From Oikopleura dioica (taxonomy: Eukaryota > Animalia > Chordata), in assembly GCA_907165135.1 (NCBI GenBank), contig OU015568.1, positions 15,821,208 through 15,885,207 on the forward strand: 64,000 nucleotides of DNA. Direction: 5' to 3'. The position numbers and the translations under genes are program-made. Position 1 is the stretch's first letter. Each line of letters begins with the position of its first letter. This document shows positions 3,389-48,626 of the stretch, one piece after another. The notes beneath the pieces were generated by a model. It worked only from the letters and a program-made list of their open reading frames with translations. It was not told the DNA's origin and did not search any database.

Positions 3389-5266
3389 ACTTATTTTTAA
3401 AATTATTTTTGCATAGCTTCGAGACAAGTTTCAGCTTTTTTCTCCGAAAAATCTCATTTCCGACTTATTTTACAAAAAATTCATAACTCCATGATTCCTG
3501 CCTTATTCATTTTATTAACGAAACTTGACGTTTATTGAGTCTTTCTTTGAATCAGAGAAAGGGTCCAAATATATCGCCCAGTATTAATTAGGCTCAATAA
3601 ACGTACCTGCCCCTTTGATGATGACGCGCGGCACCCTCGACGAGCACTCGCCGGGGGCGATTTACAGCGCCCCAGGCGCGTGCTACGAGGTGTATAAATA
3701 TACTTAATTTTGAATAATATTCTGCCAGAATGATTCCGCCGTATAACTGTCGCAATAACGAGTTAATTGCGAAAGGAACAACCATTTTGACACGTTTCTG
3801 GCAAGCGCGAAATTTACGAACTGAGAAGATCTTTTTCAAATAATGCATAAAGATACCATAGTCAAAAACTGGTGTTACCAAAATTTTGTCGATTGAAGAA
3901 GATTCTCCAAGGGACTTCGAATTTCAAGAAGGGCTTGTAAAAACGGCGGTTGACCTTGAAGCTAGGCTGATCTTTCGAAAAGCGAAGGAACAAACTTGCA
4001 TTCTGTATAAGAAAATAGGTGGATTAGCCAACCCGCGCTGTGATCCTGCGCTGGGAAGGCGGAAAAGCGACGGATTACCGGACGACCGTGCGACCTGCCC
4101 AAAAAGACCCTTCTCAATAAATGTTGTTTCAACTCCTTCCACAACAATATCTGAACATACACCTGAATACACCGACTAGCGCACACTTTCTTTTGGGCGG
4201 ACCTCAACGCTAATCGCTTTACAAAACAAAATACAACTTAGTTTTCAAGTACTCGGCAAATACTAGTAATTACGCTGGGGTGGGAGTAGAACTACATATT
4301 CTCGCTTATGCTTATATACAATCTTACATAAAGTTTATATAAGTCTCTGACTAGGCGGAATGAAGTTTTTCTGCGCACATGGTCTCCGAAAGTTGAATAA
4401 ACAACCCTGACTCTGTGTTTCCGATGCTGGAAGAGGAGGAGAAGAGAATAGAAACTCTTGATTCCGTCTATGGAATCGGAACGGTTTCAAAGTTATCTTT
4501 GTTTACTTTCACCTTTTAAAATGAAAATTTTTTAGAACACCATATTTTTGGTTCTTAATGCGTCCTGAGGTTAAATTTGTTTCATAAACTTGATAAGAGG
4601 AATTTTTGACCAAGAAAAATCAATATTTTTGCCAAAATTAGAGCAAATTTGTCATTTTTCGTCAAAAAGTCCAATTTCAAACGCGATTTTAAGGGTGTTA
4701 GAGTCAAGATAGACCCCCAAAATATGAAGCCTTAAAAATCGTTTTTTGACCTGTAGAATCCATTTCCGAGGTCAAAATTTTGAAATTCCGAAATTTAATT
4801 TTTCGAAAAACGCTGACGAAGGGTCCTTAAATTTTTACCTTATTTGGTTGATTTACAAAGGTGTACAAACAGCGAGTACGCGAAACATCCTGGATGACGC
4901 GACACATAGTCGATCATTGCTTTTTGAAATATTAACAAGAATCTAAATTGGAGGGTATGAAATTGCAATTTGCTCAGCATAATAGCCTAACGAGGATATT
5001 TGTCTTGCTCCGGCAGCCTGCGAGGGTCATAAATTTGACGCCAAGTAGGTTCCATTATTCGATAATAGGTAAATATTGAGGGTAATCACGCGATACATTA
5101 TTTAACAGCAAATGCTTTTTCGCGTGTTCGGTTTGATTTACGGCGGAAATCCGAAAGGTTGAACGAGTAAATTGACAGAATTGTAAAACATAGAAAAATA
5201 GGGAATTCATTAAGGGGGTAGATATCAAGAATTGGATTTTCTTTCAGTCTTTTTTTCCTAATTTTC

Positions 5267-42727: not shown

Positions 42728-45700
42728 TTAAAAGTACATGCTTCCATTGCAGCCATATACAGATTTGTCGAAGTTAATTGTTTTATCCATGACTGGCGGG
42801 GGCTAAATTTGACCCTTTAGAAATTGAAAACGAAGGGTTGAAGAGTACCTCAATCATGGTCGTCCACTGGCCGGAGCTTCTTCTAGGTTGACGATATTTC
42901 ATTCGAGCACGATCGCCGGCGATGTGGTCGAAGATGTGTTGAAGCTTGATCTCGCCGTCAGGGTTGATTGCAAAGAACACTTTTTCCTGCATGTTCTCGA
43001 CGCTAAATTTTTGCTAGTTTCTTCGCGAAAGGCAGTTTAGGCTACTCACGATCTTTCGTAGTCGAAATATTGGTCGCGCAGTGCAGCTTTGAGCGGCTTC
43101 GACCAGAGTTGTAAAATACTTTACCCTAGCCTCAAAGTAAAGTAAAGTATGGTAAGGTAGAAGCTATTTTTCAGTTTCACTTTACTTTACTTTACTTTAA
43201 GATTTTGAAAGTGATCTCTACTTTGCCAATACTTTACCATGAAAGATAAAAGTGCTTTCTACTTTACTTTACTTTACTTTATGATTTTCAAAATGAACTC
43301 TACTTTACTTTACTTCACTTAAGATTTTTAATAATGATTTTACTTTACTTTGCTTTATGTTGGAGTTTTCTCTAGAAAAATCTATTGATATTTATGAAAT
43401 CTTATTTTACGCTTAACAAGCGATTATTTCTCTAGACTTGCTATTTTCGCAAGCATTTTTCAATAAATTTTCATAACACGATGCCGCCTAAGCGCAAAAG
43501 AGATTCCTTGGAGGTTTTTCAAGCCCCAACTGATGAAAAAACGAAGAAAAGACTCAAAACAATCTTGGAGCATGACGATATTGCCCCATATAATCTCGGG
43601 TCGTTGGAACTCGGATACATTGAAGGAAAGCCGACTGGCCTAGTGCTTTGCGAATGTGGAGAATATTTTGTCGCTGGTTCAAACGGAGCTCTTCATCTCG
43701 ACAAAAGTATTTATTTACAGGATAATTTTTAGTCATATTTTTATTCTAAGTAAGAATACATTTGGGTCGTAACCACGCATCTCGATCATCCCCATGGGAT
43801 AAAAAATTGAAACAAATCCCTGAAGACCTTGTCAATGATGTTCATCGACAAAACGCTGTTTGCATCGCAACACACAATCTCCCGATGAATATATTTTCTG
43901 AGTAAGATTAAAATGATTGTGTTGAAAATAAACATAAATAAGGAAAGCATTTGTGGAGCGCGATCGAATCCTGTTGAAAGGACTGTCACATGACCCTGAA
44001 GGGGCTCAAGATCTCAAAATGAGCAGATATCTACTCCGAAAAAGAATCCGTGATAATGCAATATCGATGAAAGAACACCTTGGAGGAAATTTCGTTCTTC
44101 TGGCAAACAAAGGATTTATTTCCTTACTATACGATCACAAGACTGTGGGAAACAAGACCTCCGATTACCAGGATAATATTCTGTCCTTGGTATGTCTTAT
44201 TCATCTTGGAAATCGATCCAAGCCGTATACGCTTTTCTTCGAGCCTGTTGATTCTCTAACGAAGCTGGACACTGTACAAACGATTCGAGACGCCCTCATG
44301 AAAGACTACGGTATCAACCTTGATGAAATAACAACTCCGTTGCCAATAACAGTCGACGGTGGCGAATATCACAGCGCTAAAACGCTGTCTGTCGCGTTCA
44401 ATGTATGCCTCGCACATTCAATGAATGTTGCTTCAAAGGTTTGAAATTTTTTGGCAAAAGTGCGCTCATAGGTTAATATGCCAATTTTTTGGCACAAGTG
44501 CACTCATGGGTTCACATGCCAATTTTTTGGCATAAATGCGCTCATGGGTTAACATGCCAATTTTTGGCATAAATGCGCTCATGGGTTAACATGCCAATTT
44601 TTGGCACAAATGCGCTCATGGGTTAAAATGCTAATTTTTGGCACAAGTGCGCTCATGGGTTAATATGCCAATTTTTTGGCACAAGTGCACTCATGGGTTA
44701 AAATGCCAATTTTTGGCACAAGTGCGCTCATGGGTTAACATGCCAATTTTTGGCACAAATGCGCTAATGGGTTAATCCGCAATTTATTATAACTTAAAAA
44801 CCTTTACAGGTTAAGGAATATTTTTAGGGCGCTGTAATTTATGCGCAACGGTATTTCGACCTGGAAAATGAAGAAAAACGAATTGACAATTTTCTTTTGA
44901 AAGCACGAAAGGGTCTGAGCAAGGAAGAACTCAAAATCATGAAGAAAGAAGGCATGCCACAAAGCCTCGCGGATTATTTCTACGATCTTCCAGTAACAGA
45001 AAAAGATTCCGTGAAAATCTTCAATATGAGGAATCCGGAGTCAAAACTAGAAGGCGATGCGCTCAAATCGATGGCGGGAAAAAGATCACCCAGTATCCAA
45101 TGCCGGCGAATCTTAACAAAATAAGATTCAACAGAATGGATCAGCATCTTGACTTACTTCTCTGCTGGGAAGGTAGAAAGACCGTTATTTTTTCCTACAA
45201 AAATTGTAGATAACATGCTGATGATGGACTCCGCCAGCTCCAAATACAGATATCTTATAACTTCACTTGCCGATGATTATCCAAATATGGCCTATGTTCG
45301 CGCGCACAAATTGGTCACAACGATATTTAGGAAGCATATTCTCCGTGCAGAGAAGAACTCTACTAGGGTGCCAGATGTATCTCAAATTTTCGAAGATTGT
45401 TTTCGAGACATTTTGAGTCTCAATTTGACTGCGCATAACTATGATCTAGAGACTGCTGACAATATAAACAGTCTTTGCAAAGGTAAATTTTCAGAAAAAA
45501 GAAATATTATTTTTCATTATTTCCAGGCGCAACTTTAAAAATGATGATGATGGTCTTTGGCTCGGCGCGTGTGCCTTTTGAAGGCTCATTTACTTTGAAG
45601 AATGGAGACGAACCACCTAGAATGACTTTGGTCAACAAGGCGTCAATGTTTATTGACTTCAATCGCCAAAAATGCAATTTTTGGCGGCTAAGAGAGGCTT

Positions 45701-48626
45701 ACAGAAATTCAAAAGGAAGGATTAAATAAAATTTTTAAAGAAAATTTTATCTTTATCAAAATAATATTATAAAGATCCATTAAAAGACCCGTTTTTGTAG
45801 CTCAGGAGCTCGTCATTTGCAGTGTCACTACCGATTGGCCAAATGAAGCTCGGGATTTTGTTGTTCAACTATCTCAAAAGCTTGAAACGGAACCAGAAGA
45901 ACTAATCATGGACGAATTGGTGATCGAGGAGCGAAACTCGGATATTGATCCAGATGTTCTGAGACAGTCACGAGGATCTCAGCCAAGAATCAATTCACCA
46001 TCAGTTGAAGGTAATTTACTTCTATCGAAAAATTATTCAAAAAAATAACAAGGCGAAATCGAGCGATTCAAGAATTCCGGGGAGAATATGTGGAGGGCTG
46101 CAATAAAGGCAGTTGAAAAAATGGGTGCGCAAGTTACTGCCAGCTCATGCTTACGGTCTTTCTACAAATTGTACCGGAAAGACTTTCCAAGATTAGGAAA
46201 GATTGCTGATTATGTAAGTTGACGCATGTATTCAAAATTATACTGTAACTTAAACTTTTAAGTTATGCGCAATGAATGGTTCTGCGAGCGAGATTGAGAG
46301 GAGTTTCGCTAGTACTACGGCGCAGGTCCAAGATCCAAAGAAAAATAGAACGAAAGCTGCGAAAATTGAGGAAACACTTCAGTTCAAGCAGTCCAAAGAG
46401 TTCTTGGACATGATGAATGAGGCGCTCAAAATGGTCAAAAAGGGCTTATAAGGCTATTTTTTTATAATCAGATTTTATTTTAATAAAGCTTAAATTTATT
46501 TTCTTTACTTTGAAATATTACTTTACGTTTCTTTGCAACTGGCGAAGTGGAGTCAGTTTCACTTTACTTTGCTTTACTTTAGAAAAAAAAAGTGAAGTCT
46601 ACTTTGCTTTACTTTACTTTAAGATCATGATGGTGGGTTTTACTTCACTTTACTTTACTTTAAGATCAATGCTGTCACTTTAACTTCACTATACTTTACT
46701 TTAAAATGGCCGAGACAATTTTCACTTTACTTTACTTTAGAAAATTTTAAAGTAGATTTTTGTCACTACTTTACTTTATGGCAAAGTAAAGTATTTTACA
46801 ACTCTGGCTTCGACTCTGCCCAATACGGAATCTTCTTCCTGGGCGCTTCGTCGTCGTCTGTCTCGTCTCCTGACTCAAGATCGTCGATGTTGTAGTTGTC
46901 TTTCGTCGAGGGGTTCATCTCCCACTTGTCACAGCCTTGAGGAGTCATTTCGTAGTTTTGGCTGCTAGGAACCGGCATTGATTTCAGTGGCGTCGTGTAA
47001 CTTGGCTATAAATATTTGATAAGAATTCATTTACTTGAAAATGTTGCTAACCTCTGGATGATGAACATTTTTGATTTCGACCTCGTCGTCACTCTCGACC
47101 GACTGCATTCTAATGGGCATCGACTGCGGCTGTTGAATCGGCGTCTCAGGAGGAGCGAATGCAGGAGCTTTGATTGGAGTGTTGTTCTTCTTTTGCATCG
47201 CCTCAATTTTCGAGCGCAGATTACCGATTTTTTCACCGGCTTGCTCGACTTGGCAGGTGTCTTTTTCAACTGCATTTCTCGCTTTTTAGCCTGCTCCTCT
47301 TCCCGCTTTTTCTGAAAGCAAAAATCGTTGGAATCGAAAGTTGAAAATGGGGAATTACCTTGACAGCGGCTAATTTTTCTGCCTCTTTCTTTTTCTTTTC
47401 TTGACGCTCTCTTTCTTTCTCTTTCTTCATTTCCTCGATTCTCTTCGCTCGTTCGTCCTCTTTCGCCTTTAGATCGGCCTTGCTTGGCGTCTTCGTGAGA
47501 AGGGTCTTACTGGAGGAGCTCGTCAACTTGCTCTTAGATGGAGTCTTGAACAATGGCCCTCGAGGAGAAGCAAATGGGCTAGCAATCTTGGACGCAAACT
47601 TTTTGAAGCTGGGTGTTCGGCTGAAGTTAGAAGCCGAACTGCTCGTCGTCGAGTTCGCTGACGCTTTGACGGAGCTAGAAGACATCGTAGACTTCTTCGA
47701 GGCTGTCGATAGATTTGATCTAATCGATGACTGGGAACGCGTCGAACTTGTCAGGTTCGATCGCGTCAGTGATGTCGGCTCAGGCTTCAGAGGCGCTGCC
47801 ATTGCGTTCTGATAAGATTGTCGCATTCGTGGAGAACCGTACTCGATTTTGAGCTCTTAAAAATAAAGTTAGCATTTGAAAACATGGAAGAGTACTCACT
47901 GTTATCGACGAGTCGATTGACAATATCCGCTTTTCGCCCAACTTTTGGCAAGTTTTCTTTGTCGCAGATCTTCTTGAGTTCAATGACTTTCAAGCTCGAG
48001 TATCGCTTCTCATACTCGACTCTCGAGCTATCGATCTGCTCGAAGAGAATCTGCTCGCTGGAAGGGCCCTCCGGTGTCTCCTCCCCTTCCTCTGGTTCTT
48101 CTTCGACTGACTCCATAGTCGGAACCTCTTTGGCGCTCTCAGTGCTTGGCTTCTCGTTTTGTACGGCGAGAGAAGGTCTGGAAGCTTCGGCCTGGCTCTC
48201 GTCGACGTCGAGGCAGATCGTCGGCACTGATTCGTCGAGCGACTCTTCGAAAAGCCGCTTCGCGCGCTCCTTCATCGGCGTCTTTGGAACTGTGTCAGTT
48301 TCCAAGAACGCCAAGATGTCAAGCTCGATTTGGCGGGTCTCGTAGAGGAAATCGACGAACTCGTTATCAAACTCCGTTGGTTTGATGACGAACTTTTCGT
48401 TCGGCTTCATCTAAAATCACAAAAGTTAGAAATAATCCTTCAAAATAGATATTACCGTCACTGGAGCGCGTATTGGAAGTGGCGGAGCCTTCTTTGACGC
48501 AGATAGGTCGACGATCTTCTCAAGATCTGTCGACCAAATCTTTCGCTTTCGCCCGAACAACGTTTTGTCGCTCGTGGCGTTCATGTCCCGCAGAACCGAT
48601 TTCGCAAGTCTTTGAATTTCATCCAT
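42728..48626 (-). CDS. INCENP: Inner centromere protein with SAP domain, charged SAH helix and IN-box; IN-box exon interrupted by a hAT transposon
   Basis: IN-box DNYNIDDLESGDETDDDEAPRKKIPYWAES continues on the other side of the transposon as KPLKAALRDQY...KLQHIF...RRSSGQW. SAP-like LKVIELKKICDKENLPKVGRKADIVNRL. 3' end approximate. Confidence 0.85.
43481..46451 (+). pseudogene. Intron-containing hAT transposase with an in-frame stop
   Basis: BED-like CEC...HLGRNH, LLYDHKT, ITVDGG, CLAH, TEWIS, and hAT C-terminal FPRLGKIADYLCAMNGSASEIERSF. In-frame TAA at 45122-45124. Confidence 0.85.
44446..44785. repeat. ~38-bp minisatellite, about 8.5 units, inside a transposase intron
   Basis: Unit TTTTTTGGCACAAGTGCGCTCATGGGTTAACATGCCAA read directly. 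Confidence 0.95.

What the first reader, a model, noticed from the sequence alone, without database searches (positions are those of the whole stretch)
43096..46814. 3.7-kb hAT transposon inserted inside the Aurora-B-activating IN-box of INCENP
The TSD GCTTCGAC lies within codons E-S-K of the IN-box: PYWAES on one side, KPLKAALRDQY on the other. Unspliced, the protein ends WAESKPEL* and loses the second half of the IN-box including the RRSS (TSS-equivalent) motif. INCENP is normally essential. As I recall O. dioica has two paralogs with distinct roles, so this is either a heterozygous null, a dead copy, or splice-rescued. One in-frame rescue exists using only TIR sequence: donor GTAAAA at 46799 and acceptor AAG at 43120-43119 give +10 aa (ESKPEFILQLWSKPLK). 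However, two nearer upstream AGs would give stops.
Basis: partly seen in the sequence, partly recalled or inferred. Interest (0 to 1): 0.78.

Follow-up and report, generated by a model that had tools for sequence, protein, structure and literature searches.

The report
Transposon splitting Oikopleura INCENPb IN-box
A 3.7-kb cut-and-paste (hAT-type) transposon really does sit inside the coding exon for the Aurora-B-activating part of one of the two essential INCENP genes of the Okinawan Oikopleura dioica reference genome. Wild relatives carry the uninterrupted exon, so it is most likely a broken allele carried in single dose, though removal by splicing is not excluded.

Summary
Window 43104-46806 is a 3,703-bp element with perfect 21-bp terminal inverted repeats and a perfect 8-bp target-site duplication (GCTTCGAC). 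A second copy on chr 1 has its own 8-bp duplication.

Its 670-aa public gene model matches only the Hermes hAT transposase by fold and has a sub-threshold hAT dimerisation hit.

The genome is O. dioica OKI2018_I69, PAR scaffold. The host gene on the minus strand is the ortholog of the Norwegian 626-aa INCENP that lacks the S-S-P site, so it is INCENPb (inferred). The insertion falls between K and P of WAESK|PLK, inside Pfam IN-box PF03941.

As assembled, the protein ends WAESKPEL* and loses the activation segment and the RRSS site. A 94%-identical TARA contig and eight contigs of other lineages aligned here have the empty site.

Zygosity and splicing could not be tested. I favour a loss-of-function allele in single dose (about 0.55), kept when the haplotypes were merged. 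Splice removal is about 0.25.

A second frame break, an A6 run at 47228-47233, is unexplained. The scan has noted similar transposon-in-exon cases in other genes of this genome, so this is one more instance, not a unique event.

The parts
43096..43103 (.). Left copy of the 8-bp target-site duplication (GCTTCGAC on +; GTCGAAGC on the coding strand, covering the last base of a Glu codon, the Ser and Lys codons and the first base of a Pro codon)
43104..46806 (+). hAT-superfamily DNA transposon, 3,703 bp, with its transposase gene on the + strand (antisense to the host gene)
43104..43124 (.). Left terminal inverted repeat, 21 nt, starting CAGAG
46786..46806 (.). Right terminal inverted repeat, a perfect complement of the left one
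43131..43357 (.). Left subterminal array of AAAGT/ACTTT pentamer clusters, about 41-bp period. Probably transposase-binding repeats (inferred).
46558..46793 (.). Right subterminal array of the same pentamer clusters
43481..46451 (+). Transposase gene, multi-exon. The public model is CAG5091254.1 (OKI2018_I69.PAR.g12937, 670 aa). The 163-aa core ORF is at 43953-44444. The C-terminal hAT-like motif exon is at 46272-46451.
44448..44775 (.). 37-bp tandem array (8.8 copies) inside the element, between transposase exons
45073..45078 (+). A-run (A5) one base shorter than in the chr 1 copy. This shifts the transposase frame that is conserved in that copy and in distant relatives L008/L009.
46807..46814 (.). 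Right copy of the 8-bp target-site duplication
46807..47005 (-). 5' part of the interrupted INCENPb exon (PSYTTPLKSMPVPSS...RKKIPYWAESK). It holds the first half of the IN-box, including the conserved Trp.
43050..43095 (-). 3' part of the interrupted exon (...PLKAALRDQYFDYER + 2 nt)
43003..43049 (-). 47-nt GT-AG intron
42849..43002 (-). Exon encoding the second half of the IN-box, including the RRSS (TSS-equivalent) site
42728..42802 (-). Last coding exon (PPPVMDKTINFDKSVYGCNGSMYF plus stop), after a 46-nt intron at 42803-42848
47031..48626 (-). Upstream INCENPb exons (N-terminal region, SAP domain, Ser-rich and Lys/Glu-rich helix regions), colinear with the Norwegian ortholog P0020
47228..47233 (-). 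A6 run on the coding strand where the conserved frame (…KPVKK | IGNLRSKIEAMQKK…) needs one more base. It is either a second frame break in this allele or a homopolymer error.

Best explanation
A low-copy hAT-superfamily DNA transposon inserted by cut-and-paste into a coding exon of INCENPb, on the pseudo-autosomal scaffold of the O. dioica OKI2018_I69 assembly. It duplicated 8 bp and split the IN-box between WAESK and PLK.

Read as assembled, the allele makes a protein that stops 3 codons into the inverted repeat. This product keeps the N-terminal, SAP and helical regions and the Trp that contacts Aurora B. It lacks about 92 C-terminal residues, including the activation segment and the RRSS phosphorylation site, so it should not activate Aurora B (inferred from the known role of the IN-box).

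INCENPb is essential in the Norwegian strain, and the locus is diploid in males. The most likely state is therefore a loss-of-function allele present in single dose (heterozygous, possibly germline-mosaic) in the sequenced male. That allele entered the reference when the two haplotypes were merged into one unphased mosaic. The functional allele is the uninterrupted exon seen in wild relatives.

Shown: the insertion, its family, its position, the truncation and the existence of the empty site. Inferred: loss of function, single dose, and the identity as INCENPb.
For: - **A true transposition event:** perfect TIRs and TSD. The second copy has the same termini and a different 8-bp TSD. Only these two copies carry the TIR.
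- **hAT family:** Foldseek's top 12 PDB hits are all Hermes transposase (E 1e-5 to 2.5e-3; the next hit is E 0.09). PF05699 matches at the C-terminus with E 0.01. Distant relatives in the genome have PF05699 hits over the cut-off.
- **Position:** PF03941 matches the 5' piece. The window's exon pieces tile the C-terminus of ortholog P0020, with SK duplicated. The paralog on C2 is colinear across the site.
- **Empty site in nature:** L016 has 94% nt identity; its 7 coding differences are all synonymous and none changes an amino acid. L017-L023 and L027 also have it. The cluster of 73-aa uninterrupted ORFs is indexed in 36 blocks of the collection.
- **Essentiality:** INCENPb RNAi arrests more than 95% of embryos and INCENPa cannot compensate (PMC6681789).
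- **Diploid, unphased reference:** C1 = 17,092,476 bp = PAR. Heterozygosity is about 3.6%. A 99-Mb Canu assembly was merged by HaploMerger2 into reference and allelic sub-assemblies (PMC8008620). These sub-assemblies are not phased (PMC5870766).
- **No full-length public model:** no Okinawan INCENPb model is in the protein collection, although the element's own model from the same annotation is there.
- **Weak in-frame acceptor:** the best-looking acceptor (pyrimidine-rich tract, first AG) gives a stop.
Against: - No reads or RNA could be examined, so single dose is an inference.
- Other notes of this scan (unchecked by me) report transposons in exons of essential genes on the single X of this same male (CKAP5, UNC79), and an eIF5B insertion seen without an empty allele. 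Heterozygous sheltering cannot explain those. They raise the chance that O. dioica removes such insertions from RNA.
- Several in-frame splice options exist, some leaving only +1 or -3 residues if non-canonical GA donors are used.
- A second frame break in the same allele (A6 at 47228-47233) is unexpected for a young recessive lethal, unless it is an assembly error.
Confidence: 0.55

Rival explanations
1. The element is removed from the pre-mRNA as a newly born intron, so the allele still makes a working or near-working INCENPb.

Candidate junctions:
- GT donor at 46799 with the AG before 43118 (+10 aa);
- GA donor at 46804 in the inverted repeat with the AG of the duplicated target site before 43096 (+1 aa);
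- GA donor at 46816 with the same acceptor (-3 aa).
For: In-frame, stop-free combinations exist. Unchecked scan notes report many transposon-in-exon cases in this genome, including genes on the single X of the sequenced male and one with no empty allele found. Larvaceans are known for transposon-derived and non-canonical introns (reviewed in PMC11282704). That G*-AG introns are common in O. dioica is my recollection of Denoeud et al. 2010, not checked here.
Against: - The in-frame GT-AG option needs the third of three closely spaced AGs. The first follows the best pyrimidine tract and gives a stop.
- Skipping the whole 245-nt exon shifts the frame (derived from the exon coordinates read).
- The family has only two copies and the other is not in an exon, so there is no sign of an introner-like habit.
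- No full-length Okinawan INCENPb model or transcript-derived protein was found.
- Any scar lies in the segment that wraps the Aurora B N-lobe.
Confidence: 0.25
2. The assembled haplotype carries a longer-standing dead allele. It would be sheltered from homozygosity, for example by linkage to the sex-specific region that adjoins this end of the pseudo-autosomal scaffold, and it would be accumulating lesions (a frameshift plus the transposon).
For: - Two independent frame-breaking features lie within about 420 bp of each other.
- The window is at PAR 15.82-15.89 Mb of 17.09 Mb, on the long arm to which the X- and Y-specific regions are thought to attach.
- Neighbouring genes show no frameshifts in the ORFs compared, so homopolymer errors are not everywhere.
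- Other transposon-hit genes are noted within this window and 75 kb upstream.
Against: - The IN-box coding sequence is identical in protein to the TARA relative, with only synonymous changes.
- Every other exon examined (all but a short, poorly conserved stretch after the 47350s intron) is intact and colinear with orthologs.
- The A6 run and the A-run break in the transposase are both the kind of error Nanopore assemblies make.
- There is no evidence here for suppressed recombination 1.2 Mb from the boundary.
Confidence: 0.1
3. The insertion is not part of the animal's inherited genome. It would be an assembly chimera, or a rare somatic or germline-mosaic transposition event that deep long-read coverage assembled and haplotype merging promoted.
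For: Nanopore depth of 221x and a 99-Mb pre-merge assembly allow minor variants to be assembled.
Against: A perfect 8-bp duplication and intact inverted repeats at exact element ends are the signature of real transposition, not of a mis-join. A mosaic event would still be a true insertion.
Confidence: 0.07

Closest known systems
hAT superfamily DNA transposons (hobo, Ac, Tam3; Hermes is the structural reference, PDB 2BW3/4D1Q)
   Same: - 8-bp target-site duplication and short inverted repeats starting CAG.
- Subterminal short repeats.
- A single transposase gene with an RNase-H-like core: a near-invariant D-H in LLYDHK, a CLAH (CxxH-like) motif, and a C-terminal ...SASEIERSFS... motif.
- Fold search returns only Hermes at E below 0.01.
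   Different: - Very divergent. No Pfam hAT, BED or DUF659 model reaches its cut-off; PF05699 scores 16.1 against 21.4 bits.
- No PDB hit by sequence or profile.
- The gene has several short introns and an internal 37-bp tandem array.
- Only two copies in the genome and no miniature derivatives.
O. dioica INCENPb (Feng et al. 2019, Cell Cycle, PMC6681789)
   Same: It is one of two IN-box genes in the genome. It is the ortholog of the Norwegian 626-aa O. dioica INCENP (the window's exon pieces are 76-91% identical to it). It lacks the S-S-P Plk1-docking site, which the paper says marks INCENPa. The other paralog, on C2, has S-S-P near residue 205-210.
   Different: This allele is interrupted in the IN-box and may also be frameshifted upstream. 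The a/b assignment rests on the S-S-P criterion only, because the paper's accession numbers were not available.
Transposon-derived introns: introners (Huff et al. 2016; Gozashti et al. 2022), MITE-derived non-canonical introns of Fritillaria borealis (Henriet et al. 2019), and maize Ds/dSpm elements spliced from exons (Wessler and colleagues, recalled from memory)
   Same: A DNA transposon sits in a coding exon, with potential splice donors in its inverted repeat and an AG in the duplicated target site. A larvacean host has a permissive spliceosome.
   Different: Splicing is not shown. The element is a 3.7-kb full-length copy, not a short multi-copy introner. The family shows no preference for genes.

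Membership tests
hAT superfamily transposon | 8-bp target-site duplication | tested here: met
   GCTTCGAC flanks the window copy. CTTGCGCC flanks the chr 1 copy.
hAT superfamily transposon | Short terminal inverted repeats with (C/T)A(G/A)NG termini | tested here: met
   21-nt perfect repeats starting CAGAG. The same ends are found in the second copy.
hAT superfamily transposon | Transposase with the Hermes-like fold (RNase-H-like core with an inserted helical domain) | tested here: inconclusive
   The AlphaFold model of the 670-aa public protein is poor (mean pLDDT 46; residues about 125-260 reach 50-78, with a beta-beta-beta-alpha-beta order). Even so, Foldseek's 12 best PDB hits are all Hermes (E 1e-5 to 2.5e-3, probability 0.93-1.0) and the next hit has E 0.09. 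TM-scores are only about 0.2. This is supportive but rests on a low-confidence model.
hAT superfamily transposon | C-terminal hAT dimerisation domain (Pfam PF05699) | tested here: inconclusive
   16.1 bits, E 0.01, at residues 590-645 of 670, against a cut-off of 21.4. There is no hit on single exons. An in-genome relative (L009) has a PF05699 match over the cut-off when summed with its neighbours in the same frame (27.1 bits); the matches near L008 (17.6 bits) and L011 (16.2 bits) stay below it.
hAT superfamily transposon | N-terminal BED-type zinc finger | tested here: not met
   No BED model hit at E up to 0.1 on the 670-aa protein. Only a CxC...H-rich stretch is seen by eye. This feature is not universal in the superfamily.
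INCENP | C-terminal IN-box (Pfam PF03941) with the conserved Trp | tested here: met
   25.1 bits against a cut-off of 22 on the 5' exon piece alone; 27.3 bits in the genome scan; the ortholog P0020 scores 32.8 bits at residues 511-544.
INCENP | Aurora B phosphorylation motif (TSS or equivalent) after the IN-box helix | tested here: met
   RQPRRSSGQW lies in exon 42849-43002. It aligns with the RRSS of orthologs, and a distant relative has RTSSAHW. In this allele it lies downstream of the insertion.
INCENP | N-terminal CEN module that binds Survivin/Borealin | not tested
   The N-terminal exons are present and colinear with the ortholog. No model or assay was applied.
O. dioica INCENPb (as opposed to INCENPa) | No S-S-P Plk1-docking site (S209 in INCENPa) | tested here: met
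   There is no SSP in the window's exons or in ortholog P0020. The C2 paralog has VSSPALP about 103 residues into its second exon, after a first exon of about 100 aa. The criterion comes from PMC6681789. No accession numbers were available to confirm it.
Introner / transposon-derived intron | Removed from mRNA by the spliceosome | not testable with these tools
   No RNA reads were available. No transcript-derived Okinawan INCENPb was in the protein collection.
Introner / transposon-derived intron | Many near-identical copies within genes | tested here: not met
   Two copies in 64 Mb. The other is nested in a palindromic repeat, not in an exon.

The most novel reading that the evidence does not exclude
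The hAT element is tolerated in an essential mitotic gene because O. dioica's permissive spliceosome removes it as a brand-new intron. One route would use a GA donor in the inverted repeat and the AG of the duplicated target site, leaving a one-residue scar. Together with the other transposon-in-exon cases noted in this genome, this would show intron birth by autonomous DNA transposons happening now in a chordate.
Probability: 0.22. Interest if true: 0.75.

Novelty: new member of a known kind. Interest (0 to 1): 0.42.

Why it matters
- **For users of the reference:** the OKI2018_I69 locus for INCENPb, a gene studied functionally in this species, is represented by an interrupted allele and has no usable full-length public model. 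Orthology, primer or knock-down design based on it would go wrong.
- **For transposon biology:** it documents a very divergent, low-copy hAT family that has moved recently in one of the most compact animal genomes.
- **For intron evolution:** it is a well-defined test case, with known essentiality, a known empty site and explicit candidate junctions. It can help decide whether exonic transposon insertions in O. dioica are sheltered nulls or nascent introns.
- **If it is a null allele:** it would be a natural INCENPb truncation that keeps the Aurora-B-contacting Trp but lacks the activation segment.

Tried and rejected
- **Pfam on single transposase exons:** no transposase-family hit; only unrelated matches below their cut-offs. 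Relatives L008, L010 and L011 also gave none.
- **PDB by sequence or profile:** the transposase gave only spurious hits, namely TAL-effector repeats and a ribosomal protein.
- **Protein Atlas:** gave only leads, DUF659 and ZBED1 RNase-like at 0.86-0.88.
- **Finding the paralog with the 3' IN-box exon:** this found nothing. The Pfam family scan of the genome did find it.
- **INCENPa/b accession numbers:** not in the paper's text, and no supplements are held.
- **Okinawan full-length INCENPb model or transcript:** two searches found none.
- **The look-up of encoding contigs:** The TARA contigs carrying the same-lineage N-terminal exon (P0022) could therefore not be fetched, and no Okinawan-lineage DNA covering 47228-47233 was obtained.
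- **HaploMerger2 and longer alleles:** I could not confirm from the paper my recollection that it favours the longer allele. It says only that the 'better-quality allele' is chosen.
- **Bacterial promoter/terminator scan:** irrelevant to this eukaryote and ignored.
- **Joined spliced models:** Exons were searched separately by reference. Hypothetical junctions were only translated inside scripts, and only short junction peptides were printed.
- **Exon skipping as rescue:** rejected, because the interrupted exon is 245 nt.

Full report
**Where the window comes from.** G000 has 64,281,565 bases in 19 contigs. Contig C1 is 17,092,476 bp and C4 is 14,533,022 bp. These are exactly the lengths given for the PAR and chr 1 scaffolds of the Oikopleura dioica OKI2018_I69 assembly (PMC8008620). 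The element's own gene model is in NCBI as CAG5091254.1, 'Oidioi.mRNA.OKI2018_I69.PAR.g12937'. The window is PAR:15,821,208-15,885,207. It lies on the long arm, about 1.2 Mb from the end to which the authors think the X- and Y-specific regions attach.

**The element.**
- The repeat finder gives arms 43103-43124 and 46786-46807, 22 nt, 100% complementary. With CAG...CTG termini the element is 43104-46806 (3,703 bp), flanked by GCTTCGAC on both sides.
- A second copy at C4:11612356-11616004 shares the same first and last bases. Its own 8-bp duplication is CTTGCGCC. It differs by 169 substitutions and a few indels.
- A scan for the 21-nt repeat with up to 3 mismatches finds only these four ends plus chance-level hits. 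The family therefore has two copies and no miniature derivatives.
- Both ends carry arrays of AAAGT/ACTTT pentamers with a 41-bp period.

**The transposase.**
- The + strand holds a split transposase gene. A 163-aa ORF (43953-44444) has distant relatives elsewhere in the genome at 24-33% identity. A relative's locus (L009) has a Pfam hAT-dimerisation match over the cut-off when summed with its neighbours in the same frame.
- The exhaustive representative search found the 670-aa public model (99% identical) and a 611-aa Norwegian O. dioica protein.
- On the 670-aa protein PF05699 scores 16.1 bits (E 0.01), below the cut-off but at the expected C-terminal place.
- An AlphaFold model built on 11 sequences is poor, with mean pLDDT 46. 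Yet Foldseek's twelve best PDB matches are all Hermes transposase, and nothing else is below E 0.09.
- Together with the 8-bp duplications and CAGAG termini, I accept hAT superfamily membership. It is a very divergent lineage.
- The window's copy has an A-run one base shorter at 45073-45078 than the chr 1 copy. This breaks the frame that the chr 1 copy and relatives L008/L009 keep. The public model steps around the break with a frame-switching 'intron'. This copy may therefore be defective, or the base may be a homopolymer error.

**The host gene.**
- On the minus strand, the exon piece 46807-47005 ends ...RKKIPYWAESK and scores above the Pfam cut-off for the INCENP IN-box.
- The genome has exactly two IN-box matches: this one, which reads into the inverted repeat and hits a TAA, and an intact one on C2.
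- A 373-aa ORF from a related contig retrieved the Norwegian 626-aa O. dioica INCENP (P0020), a 628-aa JGI protein and a 558-aa transcript-derived protein.
- The window's four 3' exon pieces tile the last 157 residues of P0020, with only the residues S-K present twice, as expected from the duplication. The insertion corresponds to about residue 534 of 626, inside the Pfam match at 511-544.
- Feng et al. (PMC6681789) report two paralogs. INCENPa has an S-S-P Plk1-docking site (S209) and INCENPb lacks it. Both are required: INCENPb RNAi arrests more than 95% of embryos at cytokinesis and INCENPa does not compensate.
- Neither the window gene nor P0020 has S-S-P. The C2 paralog has it at roughly residue 205-210. 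I therefore call the window gene INCENPb; this is an inference.

**The empty site exists.**
- A protein search with the 60-aa interrupted ORF returned a 73-aa ORF (P0001). It is identical up to WAESK and then continues PLKAALRDQYFDYERS.
- It is encoded on TARA Oceans contig L016. This contig aligns to both flanks of the element at 94.4% identity, with a 9-base overlap at the junction: one copy of the target 8-mer and no element.
- In the coding parts, L016 differs from the window at 7 positions, all synonymous. The 47-nt intron has 6 differences.
- The eight contigs of other O. dioica lineages aligned here (69-74% identity) break at exactly the same bases. The 90% cluster of uninterrupted ORFs has nine variants from ENA, JGI and Logan.
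- The insertion is therefore derived and not general. The gene was under purifying selection up to the recent past.

**Consequence as assembled.** The ORF ends WAESKPEL*. It keeps the Trp that the paper marks as the Aurora B contact. It loses the downstream Phe-containing activation segment and RRSS.

**Why I favour a single-dose null.**
- The locus is pseudo-autosomal, hence diploid in the sequenced male.
- Heterozygosity was about 3.6%. A 99-Mb diploid assembly was merged by HaploMerger2 into reference and allelic sub-assemblies. These are not phased and take the 'better-quality' allele.
- No full-length Okinawan INCENPb model exists in the protein collection, although the element's own model does.
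- Splicing would need poor sites. With the best GT donor (GTAAAA at 46799), the first AG after the pyrimidine-rich tract (exon resuming at 43130) gives a stop. The second (43125) shifts the frame. Only the third (43118) is in frame, adding 10 aa.

**What keeps splicing alive.**
- With non-canonical G*-AG introns there are shorter scars. A GA donor at 46804 with the target-site AG (exon resuming at 43096) gives +1 aa. A GA donor at 46816 with the same AG gives -3 aa.
- Notes from other agents of this scan, which I did not test, describe transposons in exons of CKAP5 and UNC79 on the single X of this male, and of eIF5B with no empty allele seen. They also describe CPSF2, 75 kb upstream of this window, with empty alleles in all samples.
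- The X-linked cases cannot be sheltered by heterozygosity. They moved my estimate for splice removal from about 0.1 to about 0.25.

**An unexplained extra.** At 47228-47233 the coding strand has A6 where the conserved protein frame (…KPVKK followed by IGNLRSKIEAMQKK…) needs A7. If this is real, the allele is broken twice. That would fit a longer-lived, sheltered dead allele better than a young lethal. If it is a Nanopore homopolymer error, it means nothing. Neighbouring genes show no frameshift in the ORFs compared. The 1-base indels between the two element copies mostly lie in A/T runs. I cannot decide between the two readings.

**Limits.**
- No reads or RNA were available.
- Exons were handled separately by reference.

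**Verdict.** This is an ordinary kind of event (a transposon insertion allele) in an unusually interesting place, and one of many similar cases in this assembly. Whether it is a null allele or a nascent intron remains open and is easy to test with the existing reads.

Noticed in passing
window 47228-47233 (minus-strand coding): An A6 run in an INCENPb exon where orthologs and the flanking conserved residues require one more base. This is a second frame break in this allele or a homopolymer assembly error.
   Followed up: partly
window 47889-48410 (minus strand): The N-terminal half of INCENPb carries a SAP domain (PF02037, E 1e-9 here; 24.1 bits, just over the cut-off, in the Norwegian ortholog P0020). 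The text of the INCENP paralog paper does not mention it.
   Followed up: no
window 45073-45078 and public model CAG5091254.1: The public 670-aa gene model of the transposase avoids a 1-base frame break by switching frame through a predicted intron. It replaces a conserved segment (VTEKDSVKIF...) with out-of-frame residues. This is probably an annotation artefact.
   Followed up: partly
window 44448-44775: A 37-bp tandem array (8.8 copies, 91% matches) lies inside the element between transposase exons. Its copy number differs from the chr 1 copy by two units.
   Followed up: no
L002 about 1400-1500 and 5150-5230 (G000:C4 around 11.612-11.616 Mb): The second copy of the element is nested inside a palindromic (foldback or MITE-like) sequence. 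Its two flanks are inverted complements of each other, and no long ORF crosses the site.
   Followed up: partly
L031:1590-1910 (unnamed ENA assembly, distant animal): In a distant INCENP homolog, a phase-1 GT-AG intron of about 300 nt sits right after WAQ(G), one to two codons from where the hAT element landed in O. dioica. O. dioica has no intron there.
   Followed up: partly
G000:C2:5450040-5450183 (L014/L028): The other paralog (INCENPa by the S-S-P criterion) lies on the 12,959,145-bp scaffold. [quoted passage not shown]
   Followed up: no
G000:C1:636914-637105, 641782-641973, 732634-732825, 737494-737685; C5:13847453; C4:380299, 393172: At least seven loci carry the same PF05699 (hAT dimerisation) match at 38.7-39 bits inside identical 177-aa open frames. 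This is a different, multi-copy hAT family in the same genome.
   Followed up: no
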